A stretch of 64,000 bases of DNA from Trichoplax adhaerens. Lineage: Eukaryota; Animalia; Placozoa. The stretch is from NCBI RefSeq assembly GCF_000150275.1, contig NW_002060944.1:2580152-2644151 (forward strand). The letters run 5' to 3'. Positions 401-45,267 of the stretch are shown piece by piece. A program made the position numbers and the translations under genes. The notes beneath the pieces were generated by a model that saw nothing but the letters and a program-made list of their open reading frames with translations, ran no database searches and was not told the origin of the DNA. Numbering within the stretch: position 1 is the first letter of the stretch; every line of letters starts with the position of its first letter.

Positions 401-402
401 TC

Positions 403-1730: not shown

Positions 1731-1738
1731 AATTATCC

Positions 1739-6724: not shown

Positions 6725-8511
6725 TTAAACGTGCACTGGCAATTCAAGGACAATTGTACATAAAACTTGCTCGCCATTTTCATTTAAAGCTGTGAAATTA
6801 ATAGGTTGCGTTGCTGAGCCAGTTTGTAGGCAATCTTCCAACTTCGAATAGATTTTTGGATATGAATCCTTAAAGTTGATATAGTGATCTGTTAATACAT
6901 GGAGAGTATGTTGTAAAAACTGCTGCTTAAAATCCGTGGTAATTCCGCTACTTTTTTTCAGGTCATACATAGATACAACAACATGATCATGATGCAAGTT
7001 ATCATGATCATTACAATCTGTTAGCGAAGGCGGATCCAAAGTAGCAGATGGCGTCAATAAAGTAGGATATAAACGGAGTTGAACACATGTTTTATATGAT
7101 TTACTATATGCATTACCAGTAATAATGCGTAGAGAGTTTTTACTTTGCCTTTTCTCTAAAGGGGCAACAACAGTAACACATAATAAATATTCCTCTATTG
7201 GATTGTATTGATCGCACATCGAAACCAATATAGATGCTTTAGATACGTGTCCAGCGGATTTTAGTAATGTCGTTTTATCAGCGTAACTAGGAGTATACGA
7301 TAATTTTTTTAGGTCGTCGACATGAAATTCTTTGGCTATTTCTAGTGAAGGTAAGACTAATAATAAACATCCCCGTCCATACAGTTTATACTTATCCATA
7401 GCTAATTTAGACAACCATAGACTTGTTTCTTGATGTTGAATGCACATTACGACAATGTTATGGATGCATTCTTTGATAGAAGCCACAACTTCAGACAGTT
7501 TCTGTTGCTGACTGTGGTTATCATCAGTGCAATCACTGATATCTATTTGTAAATGGCGAGCTCGACTACTGATCATACAAACTGCCTTATCACCTTCTTG
7601 ATGCGATTGTTTCCTAATGGAAATGTCAGCTCTACCTTTAGCATCTACCAGGCTTACTGAATCGCTTAGGATATTTTCATCGTCAGCGAGATTTCCATCA
7701 CTGTTACGTGATGATACAGAGTGATTACTTAGGTAAGAATCGTTAGATCCAATGCGATGGCGTGTACAATCTTGATTGTCATTCGTATGAAAGTCTGATG
7801 ATTCGCCGGTGTCATGGACATAAATATAGTCGGTATTATTGTAATCTACCAATGTGACTGTTGACATAGACTCTGAAGTCGCATCAGCTTGGTGTCTTTA
7901 ATATATAATAATATATAAATAGCAATTTTTCTATAAGCTAAAATTTACGTGCTAAGCCAGCGAAAACATTAAGACTAGATGATAAAACAAAATTCTGCTA
8001 AAAGAGCTCAATACACTGCAGTAACATATAAATAATAATTTATTTGGATAAAATAGACTTACATCTTGGTTGGATCTGTGGCAGATCCATCGTTGGCGTT
8101 ATAGGAGTCGGGAGATTTTCCTCCTGCTTTCGTTTTCATTATTGTATCGTTGTTGTTATCATCAATTTCTAAGAAACCAATTAAAGAGACTTGTTATATT
8201 CGAACATCACACCCTAAATTTTCATATGAATTGAAATATCTAACGAATATGGATGGTGTGATACATTCGTATATTTATCTTTGATGGGTATTAGCACAAT
8301 GATCAATTTAATACACAGTAAGGTGCATATAGATATAAATACTGAAAACTGTAGCAGTAGAAAAAATCGTTGTACTACAAAGGCGCATGGATATGATTGA
8401 ATTTTTTAAGCTCTCTTAATTTCGCAAGTCCTTTACAAGCTAATAAACATGTTCGTATCATGGTATGAATGAAGATAAGGCTAAAAAAATTTAGCACCTA
8501 CTTTTACTCAT
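6725..8511 (-). CDS. AJM1: Apical junction component 1 (AJM1/C9orf172)-like protein, about 428 aa
   Basis: Phase-compatible exons 8511-8502, 8168-8063 and 7895-6725. C-terminal blocks CIHNIVVMC..LSKLA..GRGCLLLVLPS, QYNPIEEYLLCVTV and NFKDSYPKIYSKL..P....GEQVLCTIV match my recollection of the AJM1 core. The first exon is less certain. Confidence 0.65.
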
Positions 8512-9696
8512 TGTAATATTCAAATATCACTCGTATTTCACACAATCTGATGAAAGCGTCATCTTTGCTTAAGCGTGGATTGAGCTCCTTTCGATGCAAT
8601 TTTTTAAGCGTAATGAGCTGGTGCATAATTTAAAGAATTAAAGCATTACGCGTATCTCATGTAGAAACTTAACCATTAGCTGTATACGATTAAAGTGACG
8701 CAAGTGTGGTTATGATTTTCTATTTTGTTCTTCTGGGATGGCAACGAAAACATCGAAGCTCAGTCTAATTAGCATTCGTACTTAATAATAAATAATTGAC
8801 TTCAGAGAATAGAAAACGATCTCGTTTCGCTTCTTGTAAAGAAGAGTCAAAGAATAGACCAACTATGTAAAAGTAAATAATAAGTAGGTTAGTAGTAACA
8901 GAGTTACTACAAATTACTACAGTAGTACTGTAATTTCTAGAAGTCCATGGTTAGTACACTCACGGACTCTTTAAGAGAATAGAAATTCCTGGTACCGTAA
9001 AGTACATTATTGTAAATCATTCATTAGTAAAAGTTAGAAGAAGAATTTTACTACGTTACTGTACAATGTATAAAATCATTGATTGTAATCTTGAAAGATT
9101 TTACCGGTAAAATACGCTTCCATTTGAGAAATATTTTAAACGACTTCCATCAAGTATTTTCTATGAGATTGATAGCTTTGATGTTAAATGATAAGAACGT
9201 TATTTACTTAAGACATTTTAATCGTTTGAGCTAGATTTGATATTACGTATTATGATACTACAGTACTGTATTTGTTTCGATAAAATATCCGCATAATAAA
9301 TTGAAAAGAATAAAAATTCATTGCAGCATTACGCAATTACTTGACTGCATTAATTAATTTTAGGAATGAGCTTATCAATTAATTTCACTACAGCACTTTG
9401 TATGCTTTCAACTCCAAGTACAGCATTTTAAAAATGGATAAACTGTACACAAGACATAATAGCAGTTTATGTTATTTACTCGCGGTTTAAACGAAAAAAC
9501 AATGCAAATGTAGATTTGATTGTTTATAGGAAACTAATCGTGAGCATTACATGCTCATGTTATTAGTTCTCAGCAATAAGTAATTTCGGGTTAGGTAATA
9601 GCGACTCGTAATTATTCGCTTTGACTATGTAAGAGACACTTTGGATCAACAGTATCTCTTTCACAGTCGATTCGATCTTTTTCTAATATTGATCAA

Positions 9697-9897
9697 TTAG
9701 GTCTTACCTGTAGTTTGTTCATCTTCTTTCCTTTTTTCAGCATTGCCTTTAAAAAGAGCTTTTCCAACTAACATCGCTAAATATGCGATAACAATAACCG
9801 AAAGTGTACATAGAATTAATTGATCACATACGGAGTTGTACATAAAACTTTCCATGAACCAATTATGGCAAAAGTTAAATATTGAATTGATAAACAT
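9697..9897 (-). CDS. Putative 66-aa single-pass membrane microprotein
   Basis: ATG-initiated ORF with one hydrophobic helix (LILCTLSVIVIAYLAMLVG) and a charged tail; short TACAGTACTGTACTG tract about 140 nt upstream. Confidence 0.35.
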   Translation of the reverse strand: MFINSIFNFCHNWFMESFMYNSVCDQLILCTLSVIVIAYLAMLVGKALFKGNAEKRKEDEQTTGKT

Positions 9898-10630
9898 GAT
9901 GAGTTTAATATACGAATATAATCACAGTGTAATAACAGAATTAATACTCTAAGAATACAGGGTTAAGAGTTAAGATTCGTTAATTCAAAGAGGAGATGAT
10001 GGACAATTGTGCAGTGAGCGACAAGTGTCATAAAATACAGTACTGTACTGCGATCAATACGGTAATTTAATGCAATTTTTAGACTCTGTTTGGAAATATG
10101 TTGAATGCCCAATTTTGTATCAAATGTTGAGAGCCTGAAAATGTAGAAGGCTTCATAAAAACGGAGATAATCTATGAAATGGTAATGGCGATCACATCAT
10201 TGCTAATCAAAATATCAGTAACAATGTTGTTCTGGAATTTTGGTTTCTGTCAACTTCTTGATGTTGTGGAGTAATTTACTGCCGATAGAGATTGCTACAT
10301 GAAGAGGTGTAGCTACAGGTTGCAAGCGAAGGTCTCGTAGTAGCGTAGGAAAGATTGTGATCTGGTGAAAAGCGAAGAGGTTATTCGATGATTTACTAAC
10401 TGTAAATAAATAATATTGCGAACTACCGCAATTCCCTAGGTTTGGCCCAAATACAGTACTTTCCGATATCCTGGAAAGTGCATATTTCCCGTAAAGTACT
10501 ACTTTAATTTCAATTTTCAACCGTGTAATTTAAAGACACCTACTGCGTTATCTATGACTGTGATATTTATTCAAAGATAATTACTGATTACAGTACTGCA
10601 CCACTGTAACTGCAAAGTGAAATTAATTAA

Positions 10631-11148
10631 TTTTACCGATTCACGTCCATGTTATTTATGAAGCAAGCGTGGTTGCATTGTTAAATTTTTTCCTCAAGGT
10701 CTTAGATAAAGTACGGTACTATACTGTACTTAAATGCTATCGATTGATACAACGTTTAAATAAAATCCGTCAAAGTTTTACCATTTTATTCCATTTATGA
10801 ACACTAAATTGGAAAAGATCAGGCTATGCAGTACTGGGTTAAGGGTTACTGCACTGTATGTAGGTTGTACTGTGCGGTACACTGTACAACGAGGACTCTT
10901 AAGCCCCGACAATAGTATTGGCCTAATCCATTCTTCGATTTTACAAGTCTTGTTCTCCATTTCGTTTGCATGAAATGATATTTGCTGTTGATACAGTCAT
11001 CGTCAACAGTGAACAACTGAGATTTCAGATTCACAAACTCGTTTATAATATTCCAGGACTTTTCTTTCTTTAGAAATCCCTATTGCGAACAGTAATATTT
11101 TTAACAACTATGACCACGCTTGCTTGACTGTAGGCATATTCGGTAAAA
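10631..11148. mobile_element. Degenerate element with imperfect ~50-bp terminal inverted repeats
   Basis: TTTTACCGA..AAGCAAGCGTGGT..TTGTTAAA (10631-10685) mirrored by TTTAACAA..ACCACGCTTGCTT..TCGGTAAAA (11100-11148). Confidence 0.45.
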
Positions 11149-11390
11149 GGGCAGTAGCTCTGCCGAGAGTGGAGTTAGTTGTAAGAAAATTTTTCATATT
11201 TCTTCACATTTCTATGCGGTGGAATATATTACAGTACAGTACAGTATATAGACTACGAGTGGATTGATGATTTCGTTCGCTTTGCTTACCTGATCAGATG
11301 CACATAGTTATTTTACGGAGAAACAAAGTTCAACTTACAATCTCCGGTATAGATTGATTTTACTTACATAACTTCTTGCTGTTCGTTCTA

Positions 11391-11453
11391 ATCATGTCCC
11401 AAAAGTACCGCCGGAGTAGTTAAAATGATTCGTATCTACTTTTGGGTAATGAT
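11391..11453. repeat. Short inverted repeat (15 of 17 bp arms)
   Basis: ATCATGTCCCAAAAGTA ... TACTTTTGGGTAATGAT. Confidence 0.5.
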
Positions 11454-12323
11454 GGTGAAGAACAAAGTTATAACATACTTTATTGTAAGTCTTCAATTTT
11501 TTTACATCATTTTCTAGGTATAAAATGAATTTAATGTAAACAGCTATCCGTGATTGTAATCATAAATATACCGTAAACTTTCTGTAAGTTAAAATAGAAA
11601 TCGATGAGAACGTTCTAAAACTAACTGTGCATTCTTAAAATACTGCATACGGTATAGGGCATTAAATTTGCAGCGAATATTTTCTGCTAATACTTAACTT
11701 TGTACATTACCTTTTTTGATTTTTTGTTCTCTATAGTAATAAGATACTAACGTGTCAATTGAGTAAGCCTAAGAAGACCGTACTAAGCATGGTATCACCG
11801 ATATCGGAATCTCACGTTTTGAGATTTTGGGGCGCTATTTATGAAAGTAGTTAACACGTAGGAAACCAAAAATTTGATTTACTGTAGGATACCGGACTGC
11901 GCTTTAATTAATGAAATGCAGTAATACTGTACAGTACTGTACAGAACTACAGATACAATAACAAACTCTTCCATACTATATCTTGCTAGTGACGACCAGA
12001 TGACTAATGAATGTACTTGTATGTAATGTTAGTTGAAGTTGTGCGAACCATATTGGATCTTAACCTTGTTAAGGTAATTTAATTTTGGTTCGGATTTTAC
12101 TTTTACTTTTAACGTGTGACATCAATTACTTGCTTTACACTGCACGTATCATATCAATGTACAGTGCTGCAGTGTACGTACAAGGATACGGTGCTGTCGT
12201 ACGCATCTGTTGCTATACTGTAAGTGATCATCGAATAAGATGCTTATAAATGTCCATACGGTAGACCCTTCTCAGGAATAAAATGTGATTAAAATCGTTG
12301 GTGGTTATGTGCATTATACAATA

Positions 12324-12534
12324 CTAGTGCAAACTCCCGTCGCTTTGCTGACGGTTTACGATAATGTGCTCATTTAACAGATAGTATTACCATTTGATAG
12401 ACCTGTCAGACAAACTCTGGGACAAGGAAACGAACAGTATAAGTCTATAAGTAACTACTGACTTAAATGCCCTTTTAGTAAACGTTAATCACACACAGCG
12501 AAGTACCGTAAAGATAGAACTTTTATTACATAGA
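12324..12534 (-). mobile_element. Short non-autonomous Helitron-like element (~211 bp)
   Basis: Minus strand begins TCTATGTAATAAAAG and ends CCGTCAGCAAAGCGACGG-GAGTTTGCACTAG|T. A second copy of the 3' part lies at 1293-1390. The 5' flank is G rather than the canonical A. Confidence 0.6.
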
Positions 12535-12661
12535 CACATCTACAACTTTTCACCATGCAACTAAACTCAAACGTTCCCGTTTATGTAGGAAGCATTTAAT
12601 TTGTAAATAAGGACAGTATTATTATTATATCTTACCAGGTGAGACATCTCGTCCAGAGAAG

Positions 12662-12776
12662 CGTTTGGGTCAAAGCCCTTTCGAAAACACGACGCCGGTC
12701 GCCCGATGTTCAAAATATAAATTTTTATATTGTGGGCGACCAGTATCGAATTTTGGAAAGGGCTTTAACCCAAACG
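12662..12776. mobile_element. MITE-like palindrome with 43-bp GC-rich arms
   Basis: CGTTTGGGTCAAAGCCCTTTCGAAAACACGACGCCGGTCGCCC pairs with GGGCGACCAGTATCGAATTTTGGAAAGGGCTTTAACCCAAACG; the AT-rich spacer is also partly self-complementary. Confidence 0.6.
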
Positions 12777-15700
12777 GATCTAGATGCTCGACGCTGGGTT
12801 TTCGCCGCCCATATGAATGTACCAAAACTGACATATTCCTTACATAGCTTTTCTGTCAGTAAATATTTTTAATCTCTGAACTCACACTTAATCCAAGTAT
12901 GTATGTTGTCTAATTCAACTATCAATAGCTAGAACTTGAATCATCTTACTACTATCTACACATACTAACAATCAATATCAAATACGTAATAAACTATCAC
13001 AAATAATGTCCACATTAAGGCATTACTTATCTTACCTAGCACTACAAATATAGATATTTTCCGTATTAGCTACTACTGTACTTATTAAAGTATCTTAACG
13101 GTAAGGTAACACGGTAACATCCATCAACCGTACAATTTAACCACTACTGACTGACCTACTGTATTATGAAACTTACATTAATGAAAAACATTGCCTTTTT
13201 CCTTCATATTATTACTGCACATGCTGTAATTTTTTCATTATACAGTAATGTTATAACGGCACTAGCAATTTACTTGGATTTTGGTTTTAAAATGAGCAAG
13301 GTCGCCGTCCAAAAGGAGTTGCGACGATGCAGCTTGACGCAAATACAGCAAAAATTTGATCGAATTACGCACATTCAAATAGCAACTCAGGAACAGATAT
13401 CTATATGAAAAAGAATGACTGCACGACAGGCATAAAAGAACCAGGTGTTGTGATTGTAGCTTCGGCAGAGACTACTCCACAAAAATATTGGAAAAATTTT
13501 TTGATTTATGCAGGAATTATGGAGTAGTTCTTGGTTACGTCACCATGAAAAATTCATCTACACTCTACAGTAATGTCGGACTGCTTAACTGTACAGTGTA
13601 TAGTGTACAGTACAGCCATATGTAATGTTACCGGATGGTATTTCGCAAAGGATGCTTGCGATATGTAGAGGATGAGATATATATTTTATTAGTATCTTAG
13701 AGAGAGAAAAAGCAAGAAGACTCGGAGGAAAGTTTATTAAGGTTACAGTATACATACAGCAGACTGTACGACGTGAATGTACTTGCGGTGCTATACGTTT
13801 TATATGATAGTCCATTATGTTACATCATGGATGAAATTGAGATTACAGTATTGTATCATTTACGATTTTACGTACTGTCCAAGTGCACCAATATTCCTAA
13901 TTGTTTCCTGACAATGAACGCATTATATTGTACGATGCTATCAAATATCAACCTTCTCTATTTGTATTAAGATTGATAGGAGTGCTAATCAATACAAATT
14001 TGGTGAAATGGGGATAAATTACGTGCATTCTCAAGCCACAGTGTTATGAATTTTGATGATGCTTTGCCAATTACAGAGTACTGTACGGTGTACAGTATAG
14101 CATACGAAATAGTTCCCAGAGAAATATTAATTAGCTTCATAAACGACAGTCAGTTAGCATTATAATTATGGTTTGTGTTTCACACGAAGTGACACCATTC
14201 GTATACCCTTCATTTCGAAACAGTATCCAAGTACACTACTATATAGTTGCCATCTCATTACGTTAAGCAAACGCGGAAAGCAAGAATAGGAGTAGGAACG
14301 AAATTAGTACGAGAGCTAGAATGGTGACTAAAAGATTATTACGAATTTCATTGTTAATTAAGCAACGGCATTCGTAAGATCTTCTTGGCATATAACGATA
14401 AATGTTGGTTTATATCGTTCGTATTCTAAAAATCGATAGTTACTTTGTAATATTTTAAAAATGATACGTATATTTGTCTTGCAAGGATACTCGTATTTGA
14501 CATTTAATGAGATGATTTTAGACGAAATCTTTCGCAATAAACCAACAGTGAAAGCAATAAATGTAGACGTACGAATACTGTACAAATCCAAAAATACGCT
14601 CGTACATAGGCTATTATACGACTAAAAGGTAATCGAATTCTGTGTAATTAAACTAAAGAAGTATCCTATGAAAATAGTTATGCGGTACAGGTAACTAAAA
14701 TAAAAATATTGTTATCATTTACTATAGACCAATTCGTACTGTGCTAGAAGTAATTTTCAGGATTACAATCATAGTAGTGTAATACATACTTTATTCCCTT
14801 TCAATGACGGTGGCGAATATTTCACTGGCAATGATTATCGCAGTTGCATGCTGTTTATAGCAAAGTATTTACTACTATTAGCAATACTTGGCACAATGTT
14901 GTAAATAGAATAATGACAATGTGGTGTCTGCTTAGATCTTTCGTTCAATTTAAGTTGATAGCATCCAATGATACTGTTACGGCTTAACTTATGCAACGGG
15001 CAATTTTTACTAGCATGGGTGATACATCGTACGCCTGTCTATTATCTAATAAGAATCAATATATAGTCTATCATTACTTGTGATGTTATTCTAATGCTTA
15101 CTTATTAAATGTTATGAAAATATAACTATTTGAAATAATAGATTATAATTATCAAAAAAGAAAATTGGTGAAAGCTTAATACTTAATATCTTACATTCTG
15201 ATACAACGTTCTTGGAATGAACCTATTTCAAATTTGTCTTGAAAAGCGTTAGCGGTCGTAGTGCATGCTTTACCAATATCGCAAAAGCTAAACTATTAAG
15301 ATTATCTTGCAGAGCTGATTTTGAGACCAACTACTAGAACAAATGTGATCAACAACGACTTTGTTCTCCTTTTAGTAGCATTCCTTTTAGTCGTGAAATC
15401 GGAATCTGCTTATGTTCACGTATCTAATCGTAGCCATAACAATTATCAATAGTGTGGCAATTGTATTCATTTAAAATACGTCTTTATCGCTCTAATTGTT
15501 ACGTAAATTAACGAAGAAAAATACATTATCATGAAATATTAACAATAATAAGAGTTTACCGATATCTTACATATAAAATGTTTTACAATCGCCAGTCGAC
15601 CTTTCTACTGTATTTCATTGTTATTAAAATTTGAATTACTCCTTTTGAGTTTCCTTGAAAGGTCAAAGATACATTTAGTTCCCTGTTTATTTTTTATATA

Positions 15701-18700
15701 AATGGAGTTCTAATAACACAAATTACGAGGCAAAGAAAGAGATAATCATCACAATATGTAAATATTTTAAGTGTTGCGACATGTGATATGCTCTTTGTCA
15801 CCAATTGATCATTATTTAGACATTATACGATCGCAATACCTAACACTTTATATATTCGACTACTTTAATATTTAATAAAGTCATAAGTATATAAAATTAT
15901 AATTCGACTTTACTATCACAATTATCAATTGAGTAACGTAGAATCAAATGATAAATCCTTCATTTAATCAGGCTATCATAAAGTATTATACGGTAATTTG
16001 AGTTTAAAATATGGATAAAGCATAGTATAGCACTGTAAATGTTGCGAAACTGTGGTACGAAATAACCAACTAGCGATTGTTAAAATTAAAGAAGATAATT
16101 GAAATGCTTAAGTACTTCGGTACTAGTCTCCTAGTCTAAATGCGGTATTTAGTAGAATAAAAATTTCTAAGACGAATATTGATATGTGGAATGATTGCCT
16201 AGGTTATTCATGAGAGTTAAAATAATATTACTAAATACATAAGAGTATGCTTAGTATCACTAGAATACGAAATAATGCTATTCAGTGATGAATACAACTG
16301 TGCCCTCTGTATTGCAACCGGTGATTTCAGCGTACCAGAGCATGATTCGAAAGTGAGCTACCGTGCATGATAGCAGTTCGTATCTAGACTTAATTAATAA
16401 GATTTCATTTGTTATGTTGTTGCTTGGATGTATATTGAACAAGCTCTTTCACTCATATTTTCGTATTATACACCAACGACAATGAATTTGATCACTTTTA
16501 ATGTATTGTCTATTTTACTGTTCATTCTGTATACTACTATTGTGCATACTAGTATATGCTAGCTGCTACAAGATTAAAATGAGCACATAGCGGCAATTTT
16601 TAAATTGCAAGCCGAATTTTTCTCATTAAAATACCATGTAATAACAACATTTTATAGTGTGTACTATTACTAACTGCTTATATATCGACAACATGAAATA
16701 CAATGACATCTTATACATTGCATCTTATGAACTTTATTAGCTACTATTCCTCTTTCAATCTATTGCTTATATAAGAATCCGTACCGTATTTAGTAGCATA
16801 TACAGTACAAGTATACTGTATTCGGATAAAATTATTCTGAATAGCGAAGGCGATAGTTTCAATAATTAATATACGAGTAAAACGTATTATTCTATTACGT
16901 GCCGGCTTATACTAGTATATTTATTAAATTAAACATTGCATAAAGCCTTCTAAGCTGCTGACTAACAAAAAAACAGGGTTAGCATATACGATACTAAGCT
17001 ATTGTTGCCTGTTTATTAAAAATTTGGCTGACGTGCGGACATCTTGAACCCTGTGATGTCATACTCTGCAGCTGACAGTTTGTTGTATAAACTACCGCTT
17101 TATATAGTACAATAATGTAATTTGCCAAATCTTACCTTTAGGGAACCCGATCGCCAATGCAGAACCCAAATTATTACCGTTTGATTTAAAATTGAGTTGA
17201 GTACCATATAAAGTATACCGGTATGTACTGTATATACATAATTTGCTTTGTATATCATAATGCAGTTATTGAATGTGGAATAGTTTAGCATCCTTTAGTA
17301 TCAGACTAAATGGTCGCTAAAATGGTTTAAACTTGTAGTAAAGGTGGTAAAAAAATTGCAGGCGTTGTGATTGATAAAAGAAAAATATAGGGCGAGTAAG
17401 TGGTTACTAATAAGCCGTTTCCAGCATGATTATTGAATAATTGAACGCCAGTATTGGTAGTACATTAAGTTGTGTTTTGCTATATTGCTTTCGTTTCATC
17501 ATGCAGACAAGTTATTACATTCATAATGTTTGACAGCTCCGCATTTAACTAACATAAATCCATACAAATTCGTCTATTGCATGAAAATTAAAACAAAGCA
17601 AGCAATAAAATTGTTTCAATACTTGTTTCTAAAGCTTATGGTAATACGCATTTTTAAAATCTGAATAACGTATACCATTCAAATTTTACAAGATGAATCT
17701 TACAACATACAATATTACTAGCTACGTAGACTACGTATTATACTGTAATTATCAATATATATTGCAAACAAGTTCTAAGATAATATACTGTAGTATATTG
17801 AAGTTATGTTTTCTGTTTATTGCTCTGTCAGATTATACAAACAATAGTGATTCAATAATTTTAGCATATACATTAGAAAGTATATATATGGCTAGAGCTC
17901 ATTAATATACAGTAGTTTCATGCCGTCGACAAATAATAACGTATTTATCAATTCGGTTATCTCCTAAATGCATTATTATAAGCTAGCTATTAATTATACA
18001 AATAAACTGGGTTTTAATATTAAGCCTGCTACCGCAAACTAATGAAACGCTAATGAGAAATCTACACTATTGCGCATTTAATTAATTGTGATCTTTGTCG
18101 ATTCGCGCATAATATCCTTATATTCTCTACTTAGAATGACAAAAATGTGAACGAATATTGATCTGTTCTTTGTTAAAATTTATTTCAAAAAGTTGCTTTA
18201 GCAATGAAACCGGTAGCGACTACTTACTTAATAAAAAACATTCAGGAAAAGTTAATAAGATTTTACGGTTTCATTATCATTCTCCATAATCATTTCTATT
18301 CATATGTATAAACATGTTTAAATTTTAAACTATACAAAGAGCGATAGTCATAATAACAATAGGGTTTGCTCAATAGAATAAACTAATTGAATTAAGATCT
18401 ACAGCTGTTATTAGATATGATTTTGAAGTGTAATATGCAATTAAAGGGCTCCTCATATAAGAAGTAGTAAGTGCCTTCGGAAAGTAACTCATTGTAAAAT
18501 GATTATGGCGTTTCAATCTCTTTAAAATATGTATTACATATCAGCTGTGGAGGTTATTTAGCAATTATTTGGGATATTGTAAACTGACTAAGGTGCACAT
18601 TTATAAATTTCGAGATAGTTTCATGACTAAATGATTTTTAATGGCTATATAGTTGATGTTGAGTTAATACGAGTATATGACTTTGCCATCCAGGTCAGCT

Positions 18701-20353
18701 TACTCGTATAAATCGAAATAACATCCGCTATTTAAATGTCAAAAGCTAGCTGCGAAGGTAGATATTTATAGTTATAGATTGGATTAAGAAAGTTGCATAA
18801 TCCGAATCAACATTGTAATTGCAATAGGTTCCGTTAGTCATCACTGTTCACGCATAACTAAACCTAGACAACAATAAGTTACGATGAAATTAATGAAATT
18901 CACGTTTAATAGCAGCCACATCTTTAGCATAATGTGTTATCAGTAAATGATAATTTCAATTACGTACGTTTCATATCGTCACATTTCTCATTTAGGAGTA
19001 TTGCTATAGCCAACAAGAAGAATTCTTAGAAGTCCTGTAACTTGCCTTGTTAACCTAACCCTTCGTTACTTTTTACCATCTAATTTTGTTGTTAATTGAT
19101 TTATAAACAGCATAAATTCTTATCAGCATTCAGTTATATGAACATTGTCTCTGTACACACGCATATACGAATTTTTACTTATGCGATACCTGTTCAGTTA
19201 TGCATTGCTAAGCTAGTAGTAGACCGAGAAAATTAAATTTTGAGAATAAGAATTCAATTTCGTTATAAGTTCTTTCAATTCATATTCTTCTTGCTATGGA
19301 CATGTATTACTAAATCTTTAAATTTTTTTTATATTTATCTCGTATATTCACTTAAATGTGTACGGTAATTACCTTTACAAAATCTAACTTTGCTAATATT
19401 GCTGATTTCGCTAAGCTTATGAATAAGGGTCAATTAGTACAGGCCGTGACATTGATAGTAATGCGATCTTTTTATAGTTAGACAAATAAGCTTAGCCTTG
19501 TGAACATGTGAATTAACGCTAGAATAATTTCGCAAAAAACTCTGTGTTTCATTTCCGCACGTCTGGTTTGAGTTATTATTTGCTGTCAGCCTCGTCTTGC
19601 TGTTTATTCACCGTGAATAAAATTTTATCTAGACGAAACATCGGTCTTTTTGTTCGATATTTTTGAAGAGTATATTGTACGTAATGGTAATAATATAAAC
19701 ACTGATACTGTAATATAATGGAAATGGTAATTTGGGTATGGTCTTTATCAAACCCTGGCGGCACCCACCCCGAAATGTAACAATGGAACTTATTCCATTC
19801 GATCTATATAAAGTATTTCGCCTGCTAATAGATCAGATATTGAGAATAAAAATTGTTGCATTTAGCTAGTGGCGGACAAAGTGGATCTGATTCTTACTTC
19901 TAATTTAGGATATTGCAACAATAAAAAATATTACGATCTCGCCAATTCTCCTAATTTATATTTTATATTTAATATCAATTTATAATTTCTCATTTTAGGC
20001 AATCAAATATGGCATTGCGATCTTTTCATACATAATCGCTAGTGCCTCCCGCAACTTCGATATGTTTTCATTGATATTAGAAACATATACTGTGAAATTG
20101 ATCAAACCTTTTAATATACTTGTATACAGCTTACAACAGACTTAAAATATTTCTTCTACCTCAATAAATCCCTAAATTTGGAGTTTAATTTATTAGAATT
20201 TAAAAGTTCAGATTTACTTAACGTTAATATGAAAGTAAAATAATCTCGCCCACCAGTATTATATAGTCCTTCCGTTATGTCTTTCATTTAATTGCCAATC
20301 GTAGTAATTGCACAACATCCACATAAAATCGACGCCATTTTTATATTCGGTAG

Positions 20354-20808
20354 TAAACTATTTTTCTGGTGGCGGTAATTACAATATAAGTGGTATAAAT
20401 ATATCTATAATTTGACTATAACAGGATTTTTCTTTATCTTCATAATGTACAGCAACTATGTCTCAGAACAATCCTTATTATTTATTATTCGAGAGTTACT
20501 ACCTACTTCTATTACTGATTTAGAGTAATATAAAACTACTTGCCGTACTGATAAATCTTTAGAGAGATCTCTCAGAGTCTCTTAAACGATTTTTCTGGTG
20601 GAGGTAATTACAACATAAGTGGTATAAATATGTCTATAATTTGACTATAATAGAATCTTTCTTCATCTTCATGATATACAGCAACTATGTCTCAGAATAA
20701 ACCTTATTATTTATTATTCGAGAGTTACTACCTACTTCTATTACTGTTTTAGAGTAATATAAAACTACTTGCCGTGCTGATAAATCTTTAGAGATCTCTC
20801 AGAGTCTC
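20354..20808. repeat. Tandem duplication, two copies, period 229 bp
   Basis: 20354-20581 and 20583-20808 are highly similar, with scattered substitutions and small indels. Confidence 0.95.
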
Positions 20809-21832
20809 GAATAAATCTTCAATGGAGACATTTATTTTAAGGTAGCATTTTTTTTATACGGTAGTACTCTAGGATAGATTTTACTCTAATGTTCAAATTC
20901 TGCAACGTGACATATTTAGCATTCTATTATAGTAATGGTAATAGTTTATTTATTCTTTATCATTAGATCTTCCTCCCATTCATTCAAGTTATATATATAT
21001 GAATAACATAATTGCTATTAAGGTGCTATTGCTGTCACTTCTGTATACAAACTCATATCAAGTTCAATCATTCATATATTATTGTGTAAATACGCGTATA
21101 ATCCGCCCAGAATAGCAAAGTAGAAGCTTTACCAATAGTAACACAGTGACGCACACAAGCTTAGGTGATTTAGAACTGCTTTATTACGGTAGTTTAGGTT
21201 ATTTCTATATGTACACTATATTCGCACTCACATATTTCTTGTGCTACTCATTGCTATTACAGTGTCATCTTTTCACTGCGTATAGTACCTTTGATGCGCG
21301 TACCAAAGATACACTAATTATACTAATTATAACACGAGTTACAATATCCTACTCATGGCTACTACACAGGGTTATGCTATGCTATGCTTGCCAAAATAGC
21401 CCAAAAGTTAAGGTAAGAATACTGTTGCCATATGACACATTGAGACTATAGTGTATAGTAGAGTAGACTACACGTACGAGTTCATGTATGCAGTTGGCAG
21501 TTGCAAATCTCGTGCATCATTCTTCATCTTTTGTACAGTACTAATAGATTTCTGCAATTTCCCTTCAGTTAACTCAATACCATACGGTATTCAGTGTCCG
21601 TATTATCCTAGACACTATACCGTACAAAGTGCCGGAGAAATTTTCCTGATTTGAACGAAAATAAAATAATAAAAAAAATGTACAGAACTTTAACAAATTG
21701 CATATCAAACGATATTAGACGAGTCCATTTGCACGAATCCGTCATTATAATTTACGTACGACGTCTACAGTAGATCTTGCACTAATTATGTTTAAAGTGA
21801 AACCGTCATTCTCGAAATTCGTCAGACAGTTA

Positions 21833-21996
21833 ACTGTACAGAACAGTACTATGTACTACAGTATAATTTGTAGTTGGCATGTACTGAACAGTGTACAGTA
21901 CAGTGTAGGGTATTCCAAAGTTTTTACACTCGACCGTACCACTGCGTACAGTACAGTACAGTACTTACTGTTCGGTGTACAGTACATTATACTGTA
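21833..21996. repeat. ACAGT array upstream of the GoLoco gene
   Basis: CAGTA/TACTG runs ending about 450 nt before ATG 22445. Confidence 0.85.
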
Positions 21997-22444
21997 ATAA
22001 AGATAACTGTCCAGCTGCAGTTTATTATGTAAGCACTCGGTCATTGTAAATGTATAGAATATGAATAATAATTAGAAAGAATAATTAGAGGCTTTATTTA
22101 TCAGAAAATCTTCCAGTACGCTTATTTTTTTTTTTATTCTGGGAGGTTTCCGTTGTTGATATTTTATACGCATCTCTGTGGTAGATATCAATCATCTCCC
22201 CATGCTACTGTAAATGACGAGAACTTATTCTAGTGTGGTTGATTGGTTGTTATTTGCTGCATCATTCTACGCCAAACGTATGAACTGTTCGTATAAAAAT
22301 TGAACACCAACAGTTTCGGACTCTATCCAGCATTTTACGATCGATTGCTGGTATTTTACGGCTTGGTTACTCACGCGTATTGCCCAAAGTTTTTATTCAA
22401 AGTCTGAATACGAAACGATAGAATAAATTTTCACTTACCAGAGC

Positions 22445-25155
22445 ATGGATCAAAGCAGACCACCTTTAACTAAGGCAAAATCACTACTAGATCCTCAATG
22501 CCCTTCTAAGACGGCAGAACCCAACCGATTAAATCAAGAATTCGTGGATAGCGTCATGAAAAGTCAGGTTGGTTAAGGATAACTTAAATTCTTTCCTAAA
22601 ATTTCTTCAAACTTATACTATAGTTGTACTTTAGCTGAGCAATATTATACATGTATGCTATATATATGCACTAGCTTTATAAATTTTGTAAGATCATAAA
22701 AACATTAATGATCAGTATTATTAATTACTTATATTATTCGTAGTCATTAAAGCAATTTGATATCGTCGGTATTAGGGAAGGAGCATTTAGAAATTATTGA
22801 GGTTAAAAGTGCTTCTCCATCAAAATTTCAATTAGTGCACAAAATTTCATTCTAGAGAAAGTAGTAATCCTATACAGATTGATAATATATATAAAGGATG
22901 TGGGTATACTGAAACTGCATCATGATATTGTATATGAACTATGGGCTACAATAGAATAACTTGGATTATCAAGTTATTGGATCTTTTCACTTAGTTTGAA
23001 ACTATTAAGATACTGTATTTTAGCTTTTACTACATATTTTGAAAGGTGTGATGCCGTATCAGTACCTTATTATGGAGTAGAATGCGATATTATACTTATG
23101 CATATATCTTATTGTATCCTTAGTTATGATATAATTATTGTTAGATTTATTTTTATTCCTTCTCTATCCGCTTAAATATATACGTACATACGAGTACAAG
23201 AGTATATATATATATATATACTGTATACTGTAAGTGCAGAAATCGTTCGCACGCGAAAAAATTTGATAAATTTGGATTTTATCTTTTACAATGAATTTAT
23301 TAGTCTGAGAGATTAGACGAACAACGATGTAGTGCTTTTCTACTCAATCAAGATCTCATCCAATTGATCGATAAAGTACAAAGCAAGGGAAGAATGGATG
23401 ACCAACGCTTCACGAACGAATGTAAGACTGGTTACCAGAAATAGATTGCTGCGATTTCTTAATAACATTCAAAATATTTTGTATGGGCAGAATATAAGCT
23501 ATAACGTACTGTATGAAATAATTCCACCTGCGAGTCAAATACAATTAGATTTTATCGATCGTTTTCTCTATGATGTCTATTAATTTTGAGGCATATCGGT
23601 ATTGTTGTAGTAGGATCTCTAAAATTTGATGTTTGCCGAAGATAGAAATACTATCATACTTTAATTGTCAAAAAATTGGCTAAAAATTATCAAAATGAAA
23701 AATAGAATGTAGTTTACGCGTATATGTGCTTAAGGGTCAGCATATAGAAACGATTCAGTGATCAGATATGTAGGTTGTAAAATTAAAATTTGCCAAATTA
23801 TTTCATATAAATAATCATAAAACTAATTCTTTCATTTTAACGGCAAAGTTTGTAATAATCCTTCACTTTGCCTATTTTTTAATACAGCAGCTAGATCTAG
23901 AATATTTGTTTTAGTTTTGCACTAATACAATGTATAGCAGTGCTTTTAGATTAAAACAGTTTGCTTGCTGTGGATTTTTTGCTCGTCGATTGTTTGTATG
24001 TTTGTATATTATACGTAGTTACGTTTGATGATGTTACTCCAAGTTACGGCGTATCTTGATTGGCAATCTATGCCTAGTATACAGTATAGCGTAGACACAG
24101 ATACACCTTAGGACAATTAACCATATTTAAATATAAGTTGGAGCAACAAATATAGCACGGCCAATTAATTATTTACTTCGATTATAAGAATTTGGCAACG
24201 TAGTTGTTCTCCATTGCTTCCTGAATGCTAAGTATATACCGTCTTCGAAATGGCTCGCTGTGATAAAATGGAATCAAACAGAGACTCAAACGCTGTTCTA
24301 TAGTAGTATAGTAAAGTATGAATACAAGTAGCAATAAAACTCTTATCAACTAACAACTGGGTTATCAGTTAAATCGAAAATTGAAAGTGGACTTTACGAT
24401 GCTTTAAAAGTAACGAATCTTCCTTTGATTTAATTTTAACGTTTACTGCATCAACAACATTCAATAAATGCTATAAAACTGTCTGTTAATTTCACCAGGA
24501 ATTTACGACGTCTAGATTATGATTGGGCTATTAATATTTTGATAGTTGATATGAAAAACAGAATACATGGCAAAAAAAACGATCATCCAAATGTTAATTA
24601 TGAGCAACTAAAGAAATATAGCATACTTACAATGCTTACTATTTTATACTATGATGAACTACTTTGCCAATGCTTTATATCTATTGAAGAGCTTAGTTGT
24701 CAATCTTATAGACTAGTAAAGTAGTAATGCGATTCTGTACTATCTTGGAATAAATCTAATTAGTTTCATGATGAACACGGTTTGCAAATTATGGTGAAAA
24801 TTTGGCAGTCAATTATGGTGAAGTTGTAATTTCTAGTATAATAAGGCCATAGTAAGAGTGGTACATTGGATCAGTTAAATGTATAATGTTACAATGAAAC
24901 AATGAATTGAAATATCCAATTGCGGAGACTACAGTACTTTGTATTGTTTAATATAAAAAATAAGGTATGATTGGAGGGATCAAAATGATAGGCGAATGTA
25001 TAACATTTATGATCAATTTTCAACTAAGTATCGTCGTATCTAAGCTATTCATCAACATTTGATTAATTATGGATAACGATATCGCTAATAAATAATGAAA
25101 TTTTTATTCTTTTATACATTTAGCAACGGTCCAACGCTCGATACGCTCAGTATGA
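22445..25155 (+). CDS. Small two-GoLoco-motif protein (PCP2/GPSM3-type architecture), about 90 aa
   Basis: Exons 22445-22567, 23304-23421 and probably 25124-25155, with GT-AG junctions in compatible phases: MDQSRPPLTKAKSLLDPQCPSKTAEPNRLNQEFVDSVMKSQ/SERLDEQRCSAFLLNQDLIQLIDKVQSKGRMDDQRFTNE/STVQRSIRSV*. Two (D/E)QR triads. The last exon is less certain. Confidence 0.8.
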
Positions 25156-30829: not shown

Positions 30830-33657
30830 ATGACGGCAGTTGTAAGCGGAACTTTTGTCGGTACTTACAGAGAATCATATGAAACTAATCCATTACTGAA
30901 GAAGGTAAATTTATCCTTTGTATCAAGGAAATCAAACAGATTATAACAGATTTTTAGTGAGCCTTTGCCCTCTAGTAAATGGTATGAAATTTATGCTAAA
31001 GATTTAAGATAACTTTCAGTTCCTTTCTAGCAATTTAATTCCTAGTGTAATAACCCGGCTTCATACTAATAGTAAGAATTAGTGAATATCAGTAAGTATT
31101 TTAGGTAAATAGCTTTGATTAATCCATACTTTGATAACCTGTAAGAATAATGAAAACGGAACAGTACGTATTTGTTCAATTAGCAATAGTACTTAAATTA
31201 ATCATTATCGTCAAACACAGTAACATTGTTTCTAATCAGGAGGAATGCAGGTGCTTTTTTGTTGACATGAAATCGTTATACATATCGTTTTAAAAAGCAT
31301 CCGAAAGAGCACGAAATTTTTTTCATGACATTTTATTAATTAGAACTCGATTGAAATTTTATTAGAACAAAATTTATGCTGTTAGAGTCACTTAAAATCA
31401 AGGCTAAATTAAAAAACATTATGAATTTTATATGAGTTTGCAGCAAGTTTCCGAATATAATCAAGGCTTTATATTAAAGTATCGTTATAAACTGCATTGA
31501 AGAATGCAGCTGACATAGAATTGATAACAATTTATTGTAAGCATATTTCTGATCATTTCCGATTATCGATAAGAGCGATAGATATTTTATAGATATTTTA
31601 CTATTAGCTTTCATGTCTATAACTGAAGCGCAAAGTACCGAAAATTTTAGTACACAAAAGTAATCGATTTTCTGTAAGATTAATTTGTATATGACGTTAT
31701 ATATCGTAAAGAATGCAAATAGTGTTACCGCTCGGTTTGTAAATTATGTGTTGGCTATAAATTAGTAAAATAACAAATTTAATCCCTACGGTTAGGAATA
31801 CTCTCATAATATATAAAGTATCACAAATTCTAATGTTGTTATCACCTTATAGAGCATATTCATAATCGATACGGGTTATAACTTTCTGTGGAGTACGATG
31901 ACACAGTAAACCATTATATTTTAGTTTCTCTAATACAAAAATGAAAGAAATATTATTTGGAAGTTGATACTATTAATTTTCTGTTGCAAAATGTAATATC
32001 ACATATCATAAATCTACGATCTGCACTGCGTTCGTATATATGCTATATATACAATATTTGATGAGATATGACTAAAGTACGTATCGCATATGTGTGGTAT
32101 TAAATTTAAGAGTTAAGTTCAAATTATTATAAGAATGAAATTTTACTTGAACATTGTTCAGATTTGCTATCACAGCCTTTAAACCTGCATGTATAATATT
32201 GTATTTATGAACAGTCTGAATTAGGACGTCCATTAAATCGTGGCTTTACCCTGCCTGGCGATGATTTTGTTTACGGTGTGGCTAATCATGATAAAGGTGG
32301 CGGCGCTGCTCAGGGTAAATTTATATAGGCATAAAACATGAATATTTCAAGAACTATCTGCTTTAATTTACATTTATTCTGGATGTATTATGGATTAAGT
32401 AAAAATTGATATATTTTACTTGTAATGAATAGCTATAATGCATTGGAATAAAGACTTAAATCATAAGACGAAATTGCCTGCTTTGAAGAAGAAAGAGCAG
32501 CAACCGAAAGATTTTATTACGATGAATAAAGCTGCAACTCAATCTGGTATAACAACATCTAAGGAACAAGCAGAGTTTAGAGAAGTCAATGAAATTAGAC
32601 TAAAGAAATCATACGAGAGGAGAGCTAAACAAGCTCATAGGATACCAGTAGAAGCAGTCTTCGGTCATCCCACAAGGTAGAACCACATGAATACATTGCA
32701 TGATATTATAAATTCAAAATTTTGATAAATTTTCTTAATCACTTGTATTCTTTCTATAAGGCCATCTACGCCAGTTTTTGATCTGTTGGAACATAAATAT
32801 CAAGAGAAATGGATACAAGAAAAAAGACAGCATGAGCTTCATACCCGCGAGAAGAAGCAGCAAAAGGTTTGTCTACATAAAGCATCAGTTTTGTATGAGA
32901 TGTATTTATATGATACCGTACGTATTTGGTAAATGAATCAATGTAATAATAAGCATTGCCTAATAAATTCAGATGTTAAATGGCAAGATATATGAAACTA
33001 AGGCTTCTCTTCTACGGAAATTTGAACCACCTGTACAACAAACTTCATTTTGGCATATGCCCAAATGGGAGAAGGTAAGCTAATCATAATTACACTTAAA
33101 TCATGTGGTGCATTATAATCGTGGCTATGGGTGCTATCAAGGCTACTATTAGTTGTTTATATTGTCAAAGATGCAAAGTACTATATAATTTTATCGAATA
33201 AAATGTTTAGAATGAGGTATGATACGGTATATCCAAACGCAAGTGTGTTATAGGAGCTTTACTTATTTATTAGTCTTGCATTTTTGAAAGTTAAACTGTT
33301 GAAAATCAGATCAATGTTGAGAAGATAAACTTTTTCCGGTATTACAATTGCAAACTTAAGTTAAAGAACTTAATAGATTGCGTAAAGTAGTCATGTATAT
33401 AACGTATTATATAAACTATAATTAAACGATGGTATTTAATACATGTATGTGCACATAACATTTCATCGGTAATCTAACGGATATTATCCTTACTGATAAC
33501 CAAAAATTATTTCACACTACGATAGGTTCCGGCACATTTAGAAACTTTTAGATCAGTTAAAGCACGTGAAGCATCATTTCAAAAGCTTTATCAGGATGGA
33601 ACAGCTCGTAAAGGTATCTTTCATCATGGGGTATATGAGTTACCTAATGGCTGTTAA
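30830..33657 (+). CDS. CFAP77: Cilia- and flagella-associated protein 77 (C9orf171), 6 exons
   Basis: Exons 30830-30904, 32215-32314, 32433-32676, 32761-32866, 32973-33074, 33526-33657; motifs NPLLKKSELG, LPGDDFVYG, DFITMNKAA, FGHPTRPSTPVFDLLEHKY, WHMPKWEKVPAHLETFR. Confidence 0.92.
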
Positions 33658-40720: not shown

Positions 40721-40784
40721 GATGATTTCGGTAGGTATCTTTCCTTTTCTACAGCAACACCGTGGCACTTTGCTGTGGCTGAAC

Positions 40785-44999: not shown

Positions 45000-45267
45000 T
45001 TTATATATCGTACTTTAACCGTATATCGTGCTTTGCATTCTTCGTAGAGAAATTCTTTTAATTGATTGATTGTACAGGAAGTTTCAAGCCCCTTAGCGTA
45101 AGTGTCGTATTTTGAAATACTAGCGGTCTGGTTTTTGCACAGTGATTAGCAACTTTGTTCCTGTTGAATATATTAATTCCTCAAGGACAAAGTATTAAAT
45201 TTGCAAAAGCGGGATTTATTGAGTGAGCGAGTGATATTGAGCTTGAGGATATTATATCATGAACGGC

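What the first reader, a model, noticed from the sequence alone, without database searches (positions are those of the whole stretch)
22445..25155. Hidden stand-alone GoLoco microprotein in an early-branching animal
Seen: splicing rebuilds a GoLoco motif across the first intron (LNQEFVDSVMKSQ/SERLDEQRC), followed by a second (LNQDLIQLIDKVQSKGRMDDQRF). The protein ends within about 15 aa whether exon 3 is used or intron 2 is read through. It has an upstream in-frame stop and its own ACAGT array, and I found no TPR, RGS or RapGAP exons nearby. Knowledge: GoLoco motifs bind GDP-G-alpha-i/o as dissociation inhibitors through the (D/E)QR triad; the GoLoco-only proteins I know (PCP2/L7, GPSM3/G18) are vertebrate. 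Inference: an unannotated G-protein modulator. Its place among 9q34/MHC-paralogon genes raises the possibility that it represents the ancestor of GPSM3/PCP2, or a convergent derivative of a Rap1GAP- or Pins-type motif. It is absent from the ORF track.
Basis: partly seen in the sequence, partly recalled or inferred. Interest (0 to 1): 0.82.

Follow-up and report, generated by a model that had tools for sequence, protein, structure and literature searches.

The report
Small two-GoLoco protein gene in placozoans
This is a real, evolutionarily conserved two-exon gene for an 87-residue protein that consists of little more than two G-alpha-binding (GoLoco) motifs, so a "GoLoco-only" regulator of the PCP2/GPSM3 type exists in one of the simplest animals; a sister strain's annotation already lists it as a nameless hypothetical protein.

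Summary
Exon 1 (22445-22567) and exon 2 (23304-23444) encode an 87-aa protein whose first GoLoco motif is rebuilt across a phase-0 intron. The gene is not wholly unannotated. The same 87-aa protein is public as RDD44383.1, "hypothetical protein TrispH2_003079" of Trichoplax sp. H2. It passes the Pfam GoLoco cut-off (31.9 vs 25.1 bits).

A divergent placozoan contig (L012) carries the ortholog. Its exons are 82-90% identical in DNA, while the intron and flanks are 42-50% identical. All 11 changes in the exon 2 core are synonymous. Start, splice sites and stop position are kept.

Its donor is missing in L012, and the H2 model reads through to the TAG at 23442.

No TPR, RGS or RapGAP exons are nearby, and both species have in-frame stops just upstream of the ATG, so the gene stands alone. 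Motif 2 is divergent: it has one extra residue and scores 13 bits alone, but it is perfectly conserved.

The exon layout mirrors the last two exons of the Trichoplax Pins/LGN-like gene 195 kb upstream. That favours a partial duplication of that gene over ancestry of GPSM3/PCP2. G-alpha-i/o-GDP binding is inferred, not shown. It is a new member of a known kind.

The parts
21750..22000 (.). Array of ACAGT/ACTGT pentamers about 450-700 bp upstream of the ATG; probably promoter-proximal
   Evidence: 14 copies in one 250-bp bin. Comparable arrays lie at 250-1750, 40750-41250, 45250-45500 and 52500-53250. The last of these sits between the divergent nucleotide-sugar-transporter (-) and COBRA1/NELF-B (+) genes. 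A promoter role is inferred, not tested.
22445..22567 (+). Exon 1: start codon, 28-residue N-terminal part, and the first half (helix) of GoLoco motif 1 (...LNQEFVDSVMKSQ)
   Evidence: It equals residues 1-41 of the public protein P0001. In the ortholog (L012:101-223) there are 10 synonymous and 7 non-synonymous codon changes. All 7 non-synonymous changes fall in linker residues 18-28 (dN 0.088, dS 0.94).
22568..23303 (+). Intron 1 (phase 0, GT...AG), placed inside GoLoco motif 1 directly after the conserved Gln
   Evidence: Donor and acceptor are kept in L012, but the intron sequence is only 42-47% identical.
23304..23444 (+). Exon 2: second half of motif 1 (SERLDEQRCS), GoLoco-like motif 2, a short variable tail and the TAG stop (23442-23444)
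   Evidence: In the ortholog (L012:936-1073) the 37-codon core carries 11 synonymous and 0 non-synonymous changes (P about 1.3e-8). The stop is at the equivalent place (...QK*) in both.
22529..23333 (+). GoLoco motif 1 (protein residues 29-51; 22529-22567 plus 23304-23333), canonical, with triad E47-Q48-R49
   Evidence: Pfam PF02188 profile positions 2-21 of 22 match residues 32-51. The best solved-structure matches are GPSM2/LGN GoLoco 3 and 4 (4g5s_E, 4jhr_A).
23340..23411 (+). GoLoco-like motif 2 (protein residues 54-77, LLNQDLIQLIDKVQSKGRMDDQRF), with triad D74-Q75-R76 and one extra residue between the Gln and the triad
   Evidence: It scores 13.1 bits on its own (E 0.065, below cut-off) and has no GoLoco match in the PDB. 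It is 100% conserved at protein level in L012 despite 8 synonymous changes across residues 54-77.
25124..25155 (+).
   Evidence: The donor GT at 23422 (gaaT|GTaag) is absent at the equivalent place in L012 (aaaTATacg). The H2 gene model ends at the read-through stop. A minor isoform in this strain cannot be excluded without RNA data.

Best explanation
A single-copy, two-exon, protein-coding gene of placozoans encodes an 87-residue protein made of a short N-terminal stretch, one canonical GoLoco motif split by a phase-0 intron, a six-residue linker, one divergent GoLoco-like motif and a short tail. It has no other domain.

Shown: the gene structure, its conservation under purifying selection, and Pfam membership of the whole protein.

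Inferred: like PCP2/L7 and GPSM3/G18, the protein binds GDP-bound G-alpha of the i/o class through its helix and its (D/E)-Q-R arginine. This would hold GDP in place and keep G-alpha apart from G-beta-gamma. As a free peptide-like protein it could also compete with the TPR-GoLoco protein (Pins/LGN type) for G-alpha-i.

Its most likely origin is a partial duplication of the last two exons of the Pins/LGN-like gene that lies 195 kb upstream on the same strand. That duplication would predate the split of the two placozoan lineages compared here.
For: Gene model and annotation
- Exon 2 finds exactly one protein among 1.84 billion: P0001, 87 aa, 100% identical. It is RDD44383.1 of Trichoplax sp. 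H2 and equals exons 1+2 with read-through to the TAG.
- The H2 models are evidence-based MAKER predictions using RNA-seq (PMC6057997).
- Pfam GoLoco scores 31.9 bits against a 25.1 cut-off, with two stretches.

Conservation
- The ortholog L012 has exons 82% and 90% identical in DNA, against 42-50% for intron and flanks.
- Exon 2 core: 11 synonymous and 0 non-synonymous changes. Exon 1: dN/dS about 0.09.
- ATG, GT, AG and the stop position are conserved. In-frame stops lie 5-6 codons upstream in both.
- The gene is single copy in the genome.

Stand-alone status
- No RGS or RapGAP hit falls in the window.
- No homology to the Pins TPR exons is found in the window.
- The H2 annotation has no adjacent gene for 10 kb upstream and 7.4 kb downstream.

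Motif quality and partner
- Motif 1 aligns to LGN GoLoco 3 and 4, which have solved structures with G-alpha-i.
- T. adhaerens has three preGNAI genes and a preGNAO gene (PMC5896119), and G-alpha loci are found in this genome.
- Protein-language-model neighbours are all short GoLoco clusters.

Origin
- In the Pins-like gene (L001: TPR exons; five GoLoco motifs) the fourth motif is split after its Gln in phase 0.
- The last Pins exon carries that motif's second half plus a whole motif, the same layout as here.
- The two last exons align collinearly: 17/44 identical, E 2e-7 pairwise, and E 3.8e-4 by tblastn against the window.
Against: - No binding or GDI data exist, and no RNA reads were available to me, so transcription and the splice junction rest on the H2 model and on conservation.
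- Motif 2 fails the Pfam cut-off on its own (13.1 bits). It has a one-residue insertion before the triad and no PDB GoLoco match, so it may not bind G-alpha in the canonical way.
- The Atlas's own structure model of this protein is low-confidence (pLDDT 0.47). That is expected for a peptide that folds on binding, but it gives no support.
- The duplication origin rests on a shared intron position and about 40% identity over 44 residues of repeated short motifs. Convergence or an older common origin is not excluded.
- The organism behind L012 is unnamed (an ENA metagenome assembly). That it is a placozoan is inferred from 31% GC, the identical gene layout and the single-copy state in this genome.
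Confidence: 0.65

Rival explanations
1. The gene is real and conserved, but the protein no longer acts as a G-alpha-GDP dissociation inhibitor. The GoLoco-derived helices would serve another partner or role, for example a decoy for Pins-binding proteins or a scaffold. Alternatively, only motif 1 is active.
For: Motif 2 is sub-threshold (13.1 bits), has an extra residue between the Gln and the DQR triad, and has no PDB GoLoco match. The N-terminal 17 residues are also perfectly conserved, which suggests a second functional element that GoLoco binding does not explain.
Against: Both motifs keep the Gln and the (D/E)-Q-R arginine, and both are invariant across dS of about 0.9. Motif 1 is a full-length match to the Pfam profile and to LGN motifs crystallised with G-alpha-i. 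G-alpha-i/o genes are present.
Confidence: 0.2
2. It is the pro-ortholog of vertebrate GPSM3 and/or PCP2. An ancient GoLoco-only gene linked to the GPSM (Pins) gene would have been present in the ancestral linkage group that became the 1/6/9/19 MHC paralogon.
For: It has the same architecture as dual-GoLoco PCP2 isoforms retrieved (for example mouse isoform 5, P0091). It lies 195 kb from the GPSM homolog. Its neighbours carry the Pfam families CFAP77, COBRA1, ADK and aminotransferase, whose human members I recall as mapping to 9q34. From memory, human GPSM1, GPSM2, GPSM3 and PCP2 lie on 9q34, 1p13, 6p21 and 19p13. A short dual-GoLoco RefSeq model exists in a brittle star (XP_072045103.1), so such genes are not limited to vertebrates.
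Against: The exon 2 search of 1.84 billion proteins found no relative beyond the H2 protein. The profile search found vertebrate PCP2 only at the level of generic GoLoco similarity, 22-36% identity. The intron-in-motif layout matches the Trichoplax Pins tail, whereas the mouse Pcp2 GoLoco lies within exon 3A (PMC3939015). Motifs of about 20 residues cannot resolve orthology.
Confidence: 0.1
3. These are the terminal exons of a larger multidomain gene (Pins-, RGS12/14- or Rap1GAP-like), or a decaying partial duplicate with no function.
For: A pyrimidine-rich ...ttcacttaccag sits just before the ATG and could be an acceptor. No RNA evidence was examined here.
Against: In-frame stops lie 5-6 codons upstream in both species. 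Conservation begins exactly at the ATG. The candidate 'cag' lies 3 nt before the ATG here but 4 nt before it in L012, so no upstream reading frame is conserved. There are no TPR, RGS or RapGAP exons in the window. The H2 model is a stand-alone 87-aa gene. Eleven of 11 changes in the exon 2 core are synonymous, which rules out neutral decay.
Confidence: 0.04

Closest known systems
PCP2/L7 (GPSM4), dual-GoLoco isoforms, vertebrates
   Same: A small protein (about 100-140 aa) with no domain other than GoLoco motifs. Two motifs sit in tandem after a short N-terminal stretch. PCP2 is a known G-alpha-i/o-GDP binder with GDI activity (PMC3939015 and references cited there). Vertebrate PCP2 proteins are retrieved by the profile that includes this protein.
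   Different: This protein has only six residues between its motifs, against about 25 in mouse isoform 5. Its motif 1 is split by an intron, whereas the mouse motif lies within exon 3A. Motif 2 carries a one-residue insertion. Similarity does not go beyond the motif consensus. Orthology is not shown.
GPSM3 (G18/AGS4), vertebrates
   Same: A GoLoco-only protein without TPR or RGS domains, in a family whose members act as G-alpha-i-GDP dissociation inhibitors (established knowledge, not tested here).
   Different: From memory, GPSM3 is about 160 aa with three motifs. It fell outside the length range of the word search, so no direct comparison was made here.
C-terminal GoLoco region of Pins/LGN/AGS3 (GPSM1/2), in particular the Trichoplax homolog at G000:C1413:2.405-2.409 Mb (L001)
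   Same: The best solved-structure matches to motif 1 are human LGN GoLoco 3 and 4. The phase-0 intron directly after the motif's Gln is the same as in the fourth motif of the Trichoplax gene. In both, the terminal exon carries a motif's second half plus a whole motif, and the exons align collinearly (17/44 identical). Both genes are on the same scaffold and strand.
   Different: This gene has no TPR exons. It has its own start codon and upstream repeat array, two motifs instead of five, and a shorter inter-motif linker.
Amphiura filiformis 'G-protein-signaling modulator 2-like' isoforms X1/X2 (XP_072045094.1 / XP_072045103.1, 124/123 aa)
   Same: An invertebrate automated gene model of a short protein with two GoLoco motifs and nothing else.
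   Different: Its linker is long (about 60 residues). Its genomic context could not be fetched, so whether it stands alone is unverified. No specific similarity beyond the motifs was seen.

Membership tests
GoLoco/GPR motif family (Pfam PF02188) | Score above the Pfam gathering cut-off (25.1 bits) | tested here: met
   The public protein P0001, identical to exons 1+2, scores 31.9 bits (E 8.7e-8), with its best stretch at residues 32-51 on profile positions 2-21 of 22. Exon 2 alone scores 22.1 bits.
GoLoco/GPR motif family (Pfam PF02188) | Amphipathic helix ending in a conserved Gln, followed at fixed spacing by the (D/E)-Q-R triad whose Arg reaches the GDP phosphates | tested here: met
   Motif 1 reads QEFVDSVMKSQ-SE-RLDEQR, the same spacing as LGN GoLoco 3, EDFFDILVKCQ-GS-RLDDQR. 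The motif proper (residues 29-51) is invariant in the ortholog.
GoLoco/GPR motif family (Pfam PF02188) | The second motif qualifies on its own | tested here: inconclusive
   It scores 13.1 bits (E 0.065), below the cut-off, and has no PDB GoLoco match. The Gln and D-Q-R are present, but with one extra residue (Q-SKG-RMDDQR). It is 100% conserved in L012.
GoLoco/GPR motif family (Pfam PF02188) | Binds G-alpha-i/o-GDP and inhibits GDP release | not testable with these tools
   This needs a biochemical assay. Only the presence of partners was checked: G-alpha loci, and three preGNAI genes plus preGNAO in T. adhaerens (PMC5896119).
GoLoco-only proteins (PCP2/GPSM3 class) | No other domain; a complete short open reading frame with its own start and stop | tested here: met
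   The protein is 87 aa with no other credible Pfam hit. The ATG and the stop position are conserved and upstream in-frame stops occur in both species. The H2 model is stand-alone.
GoLoco-only proteins (PCP2/GPSM3 class) | Orthology to vertebrate PCP2 or GPSM3 (specific sequence similarity, shared introns, synteny) | tested here: inconclusive
   Only motif-level similarity was seen. The intron position is not shared with mouse Pcp2. Synteny with 9q34-type neighbours is suggestive only. No non-placozoan ortholog was found.
Pins/LGN/AGS3 (TPR-GoLoco) | N-terminal TPR array in the same gene | tested here: not met
   A tblastn of the Trichoplax Pins TPR exons against the window gave only noise. 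The start codon is conserved with stops upstream. The genome-wide TPR_12 scan was saturated by other loci and is uninformative.
RGS12/RGS14/Loco | RGS domain (and RBD) in the same gene | tested here: not met
   The nearest RGS hit is at C1413:2830036-2830802, about 186 kb beyond the window's end and about 227 kb from the gene. None falls in the window.
Rap1GAP | Rap_GAP domain in the same gene | tested here: not met
   No Rap_GAP hit falls in the window. The nearest on this scaffold is at 3.63 Mb.

The most novel reading that the evidence does not exclude
The placozoan gene is the surviving non-bilaterian representative of an ancient GoLoco-only lineage that was linked to the GPSM (Pins) gene in the ancestral 9q34/MHC-paralogon block. 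Vertebrate GPSM3 and PCP2 would descend from that lineage rather than from truncated GPSM1/2 copies.
Probability: 0.1. Interest if true: 0.65.

Novelty: new member of a known kind. Interest (0 to 1): 0.45.

Why it matters
GoLoco-only modulators (PCP2, GPSM3) are treated as vertebrate proteins. Surveys of G-protein signalling evolution list only the TPR-GoLoco, RGS12/14 and Rap1GAP architectures for early animals (PMC3971589).

A conserved 87-residue GoLoco-only gene in placozoans shows that animals without nerves or muscles also use a free GoLoco peptide alongside Pins. It gives a minimal natural test object, one canonical and one variant motif, for how such proteins tune G-alpha-i signalling or compete with Pins in cell polarity and division.

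It also illustrates that microproteins are missed by older genome annotations. This genome's public protein set lacks the gene.

The result is useful but not surprising in kind. The motif, its likely partner and its mode of action are well known.

Tried and rejected
- Word-index search with the exon 2 open frame found nothing because of the length limits. The full scan then found the H2 protein.
- The JGI metagenome scan with P0001 gave one locus, L013. It is a GC-rich bacterial contig and a false positive.
- The H1 versus H2 comparison was rejected as evidence for selection. The two are 99.5% identical over 21 kb, non-coding DNA included.
- P0010 looked like a stand-alone dual-GoLoco gene on a 3.2-Mb contig. 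Its locus (L014) has prokaryote-style ORF calls on eukaryotic DNA, with another GoLoco ORF 1.9 kb downstream, so it is probably part of a larger gene and was not used.
- The Amphiura locus could not be fetched.
- The genome-wide TPR_12 scan was swamped by expanded TPR genes. It was replaced by a local tblastn.
- The SSXT, MglA_C and BsuBI Pfam hits on the peptide are far below their cut-offs and were ignored.
- Earlier-findings look-ups were blank.
- I found no text in a placozoan chromatin paper naming the ACAGT motif.
The joined protein I used is the public record P0001 returned by a tool.
- No contig that I take for human was met.
Full report
**Source of the window.** The window is AT-rich (about 32% G+C). 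It lies at C1413:2580152-2644151 of a 105.6-Mb assembly in 1414 contigs. A 21-kb stretch around the finding is 99.5% identical to contig NOWV01000026.1 of Trichoplax sp. H2. The H2 genome paper reports 99.1% identity between H2 and the T. adhaerens reference, whose assembly is about 105 Mb (PMC6057997). I therefore take the genome for Trichoplax adhaerens H1. This is an inference.

**The observation.** An ATG at 22445 is preceded by an in-frame TAA six codons upstream. The open frame runs to ...LNQEFVDSVMKSQ at 22567, followed by GT. After an AG at 23302-3 the frame continues SERLDEQRCSAFLLNQDLIQLIDKVQSKGRMDDQRFTNE....
- Exon 2 alone scores 22.1 bits against Pfam GoLoco, with two stretches.
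- A six-frame scan of the whole genome with the GoLoco model finds only two places: a cluster at C1413:2407475-2408578, and exon 2 of this locus.
- The gene is single copy.

**A public protein with this sequence.**
- The word-index search with exon 2 was blank because of its length limits.
- The claim depends on relatives, so I ran the exhaustive search with exon 2. It returned exactly one protein among 1.84 billion, P0001: 87 aa, 100% identical over residues 42-80.
- P0001 is RDD44383.1, "hypothetical protein TrispH2_003079" of Trichoplax sp. H2. Its sequence equals exon 1 plus exon 2 read through to the TAG at 23442-23444.
- Only the H2 accession is attached to this exact sequence, so the public proteins of the present genome lack it.
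- The H2 models are evidence-based predictions made with RNA-seq.
- P0001 is a natural record returned by a tool, so I used it by id.
- P0001 scores 31.9 bits against Pfam GoLoco (cut-off 25.1). The best stretch, residues 32-51, spans the exon junction.

**Conservation.**
- The word search with P0001 found P0002, a 57-aa ORF call on a 1091-bp ENA metagenome contig (L012). The contig has 31% G+C.
- The contig contains both exons in the same layout. Exon 1 is at L012:101-223 with a GT donor. Exon 2 is at 936-1073, after ...aatgaattcattag.
- DNA identity is 82% in exon 1 and 90% in the exon 2 core. It is 42-47% in the intron and 42-56% in the flanks.
- In the 37-codon exon 2 core, all 11 differences are synonymous (dS 0.87, dN 0). 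Only 19% of possible single changes there are synonymous, so P is about 1.3e-8.
- Exon 1 has 10 synonymous and 7 non-synonymous codon changes. All 7 non-synonymous changes fall in linker residues 18-28. The first 17 residues and the motif helix are unchanged (dN 0.088, dS 0.94).
- Conservation starts at the ATG. L012 has an in-frame TGA five codons upstream.
- A possible acceptor, 'cag', lies 3 nt before the ATG here and 4 nt before it in L012, so no upstream coding frame is conserved.
- The tails differ (NECKTGYQK* against SKYTGCQK*), but both end at the same ...QK-stop.
Exon 3 (25124-25155) is unsupported.

**A stand-alone gene.**
- The H2 annotation calls no gene in the 10 kb upstream. The next gene, 7.4 kb downstream, is CFAP77.
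- Genome-wide scans place no RGS or Rap_GAP exon in the window.
- The TPR_12 scan was saturated by other loci. I therefore ran tblastn with the TPR exons of the Trichoplax Pins-like gene against the window and found only noise.

**The two motifs.**
- Motif 1 (residues 29-51) is canonical. Its best matches among solved structures are human GPSM2/LGN GoLoco 3 and 4 (4g5s_E, 4jhr_A), with the same spacing between the Gln and the DQR triad.
- Motif 2 (residues 54-77) keeps the hydrophobic helix, the Gln and D-Q-R, but has one extra residue before the triad.
- On its own, motif 2 scores 13.1 bits and finds no GoLoco in the PDB.
- Motif 2 is nevertheless invariant between the two placozoans, so it is functional in some way.
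- The Atlas's own model of the protein is low-confidence (pLDDT 0.47), and its ten best feature neighbours that carry a family all carry GoLoco; the three shown are short clusters of 62-137 aa. Both results suit a peptide that folds on its partner.
- Partners exist. There are several G-alpha loci, and the literature reports three preGNAI genes and a preGNAO gene in T. adhaerens (PMC5896119).

**Origin.**
- The other GoLoco locus (L001) has TPR-like exons followed by five GoLoco motifs, so it is the Pins/LGN/GPSM homolog. It lies 195 kb upstream on the same strand.
- Three of its motifs are split by introns. The fourth is split directly after its Gln in phase 0 (...DNEFFDMLMKCQ | ASRIDEQRVEAHL...).
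- The terminal exon carries that second half plus the fifth motif and a 12-residue tail. That is the layout of the candidate's two exons.
- The two terminal exons align collinearly: 17/44 identical, pairwise E 2e-7, and E 3.8e-4 by tblastn against the window.
- I therefore favour a partial duplication of the Pins tail that gained its own start and promoter before the two placozoan lineages split.
- By contrast, the mouse Pcp2 GoLoco motif is encoded within one exon (PMC3939015).

**Relatives elsewhere.**
- A profile built from P0001, L012 exon 2 and the Pins tail exons (alignment A2) retrieved vertebrate PCP2 proteins and many short fragments of GPSM-like genes.
- One invertebrate model stands out: Amphiura filiformis XP_072045103.1/XP_072045094.1, 123/124 aa with two GoLoco motifs and nothing else. 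Its locus could not be fetched.
- P0010 proved to be an ORF call inside a larger eukaryotic gene.
- The metagenome scan gave only a bacterial false positive.
- No specific ortholog outside placozoans was found. The sensitivity of these searches for a 20-residue motif is low.

**Synteny.**
- The window also holds an adenylate-kinase-domain gene, CFAP77, a weak aminotransferase match, a nucleotide-sugar transporter and COBRA1/NELF-B.
- From memory, not tested here, the human CFAP77, NELFB, AK8, KYAT1 and GPSM1 genes lie on 9q34, and GPSM2, GPSM3 and PCP2 lie on 1p13, 6p21 and 19p13.
It fits a local duplication next to the GPSM homolog equally well.

**Verdict.**
- The finding is real: a conserved, stand-alone, dual-GoLoco microprotein gene.
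- It is missing from this genome's public proteins but already deposited as a hypothetical protein for strain H2. It is not discussed in the papers I could search.
- It is a new member of a known kind.
- The mechanism, G-alpha-i/o-GDP binding and GDI, is inferred from motif conservation. About 0.65 for the whole statement; that the gene itself is real is close to certain.
- Ancestry of GPSM3/PCP2 remains an open minority reading, at about 0.1.

Noticed in passing
window 250-1750, 21750-22000, 40750-41250, 45250-45500, 52500-53250: There are dense arrays of ACAGT/ACTGT pentamers, up to 28 per 250 bp. The window holds 437 copies in total, against about 130 expected from base composition for both orientations. 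The arrays lie next to gene starts: one sits between the divergent nucleotide-sugar transporter and COBRA1/NELF-B genes, and another just upstream of the adenylate-kinase-domain gene. They look like a promoter-proximal feature of this genome. A placozoan chromatin paper describes a promoter motif derived from Mutator transposon ends but does not spell it out in the text.
   Followed up: partly
L001 (G000:C1413:2405975-2409031): The Trichoplax Pins/LGN-like gene carries five GoLoco motifs. From memory, vertebrate LGN/AGS3 have four and fly Pins three. Three of the five are split by introns at three different positions within the motif.
   Followed up: partly
window 20354-20808: A tandem duplication of a unit of about 228 bp, with copies about 93% identical, lies 1.6 kb upstream of the gene. 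It showed up as off-diagonal BLAST hits.
   Followed up: no
window 6728-7897 (-) and 57307-57990 (-): Two long single-exon open frames (390 aa, and 228 aa rich in Ser/Pro/Gln) have no Pfam match.
   Followed up: no
window 3915-4541 (+), 32429-32677 (+), 48997-49212 (+), 50743-52302 (-), 53165-54055 (+): The neighbouring genes are an adenylate-kinase-domain gene, CFAP77, a class I/II aminotransferase (weak match), a nucleotide-sugar transporter and COBRA1/NELF-B. From memory, several have human counterparts on 9q34.
   Followed up: partly
P0090 / P0121 (Amphiura filiformis XP_072045103.1 / XP_072045094.1): A brittle-star RefSeq model of 123-124 aa has two GoLoco motifs and no other domain. It is a possible invertebrate GoLoco-only gene. 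Its genomic context could not be fetched.
   Followed up: partly
window 8000-22400: About 14.5 kb upstream of the gene has no convincing coding ORF, and the H2 annotation calls no gene in the last 10 kb of it. That is long for this compact genome.
   Followed up: no
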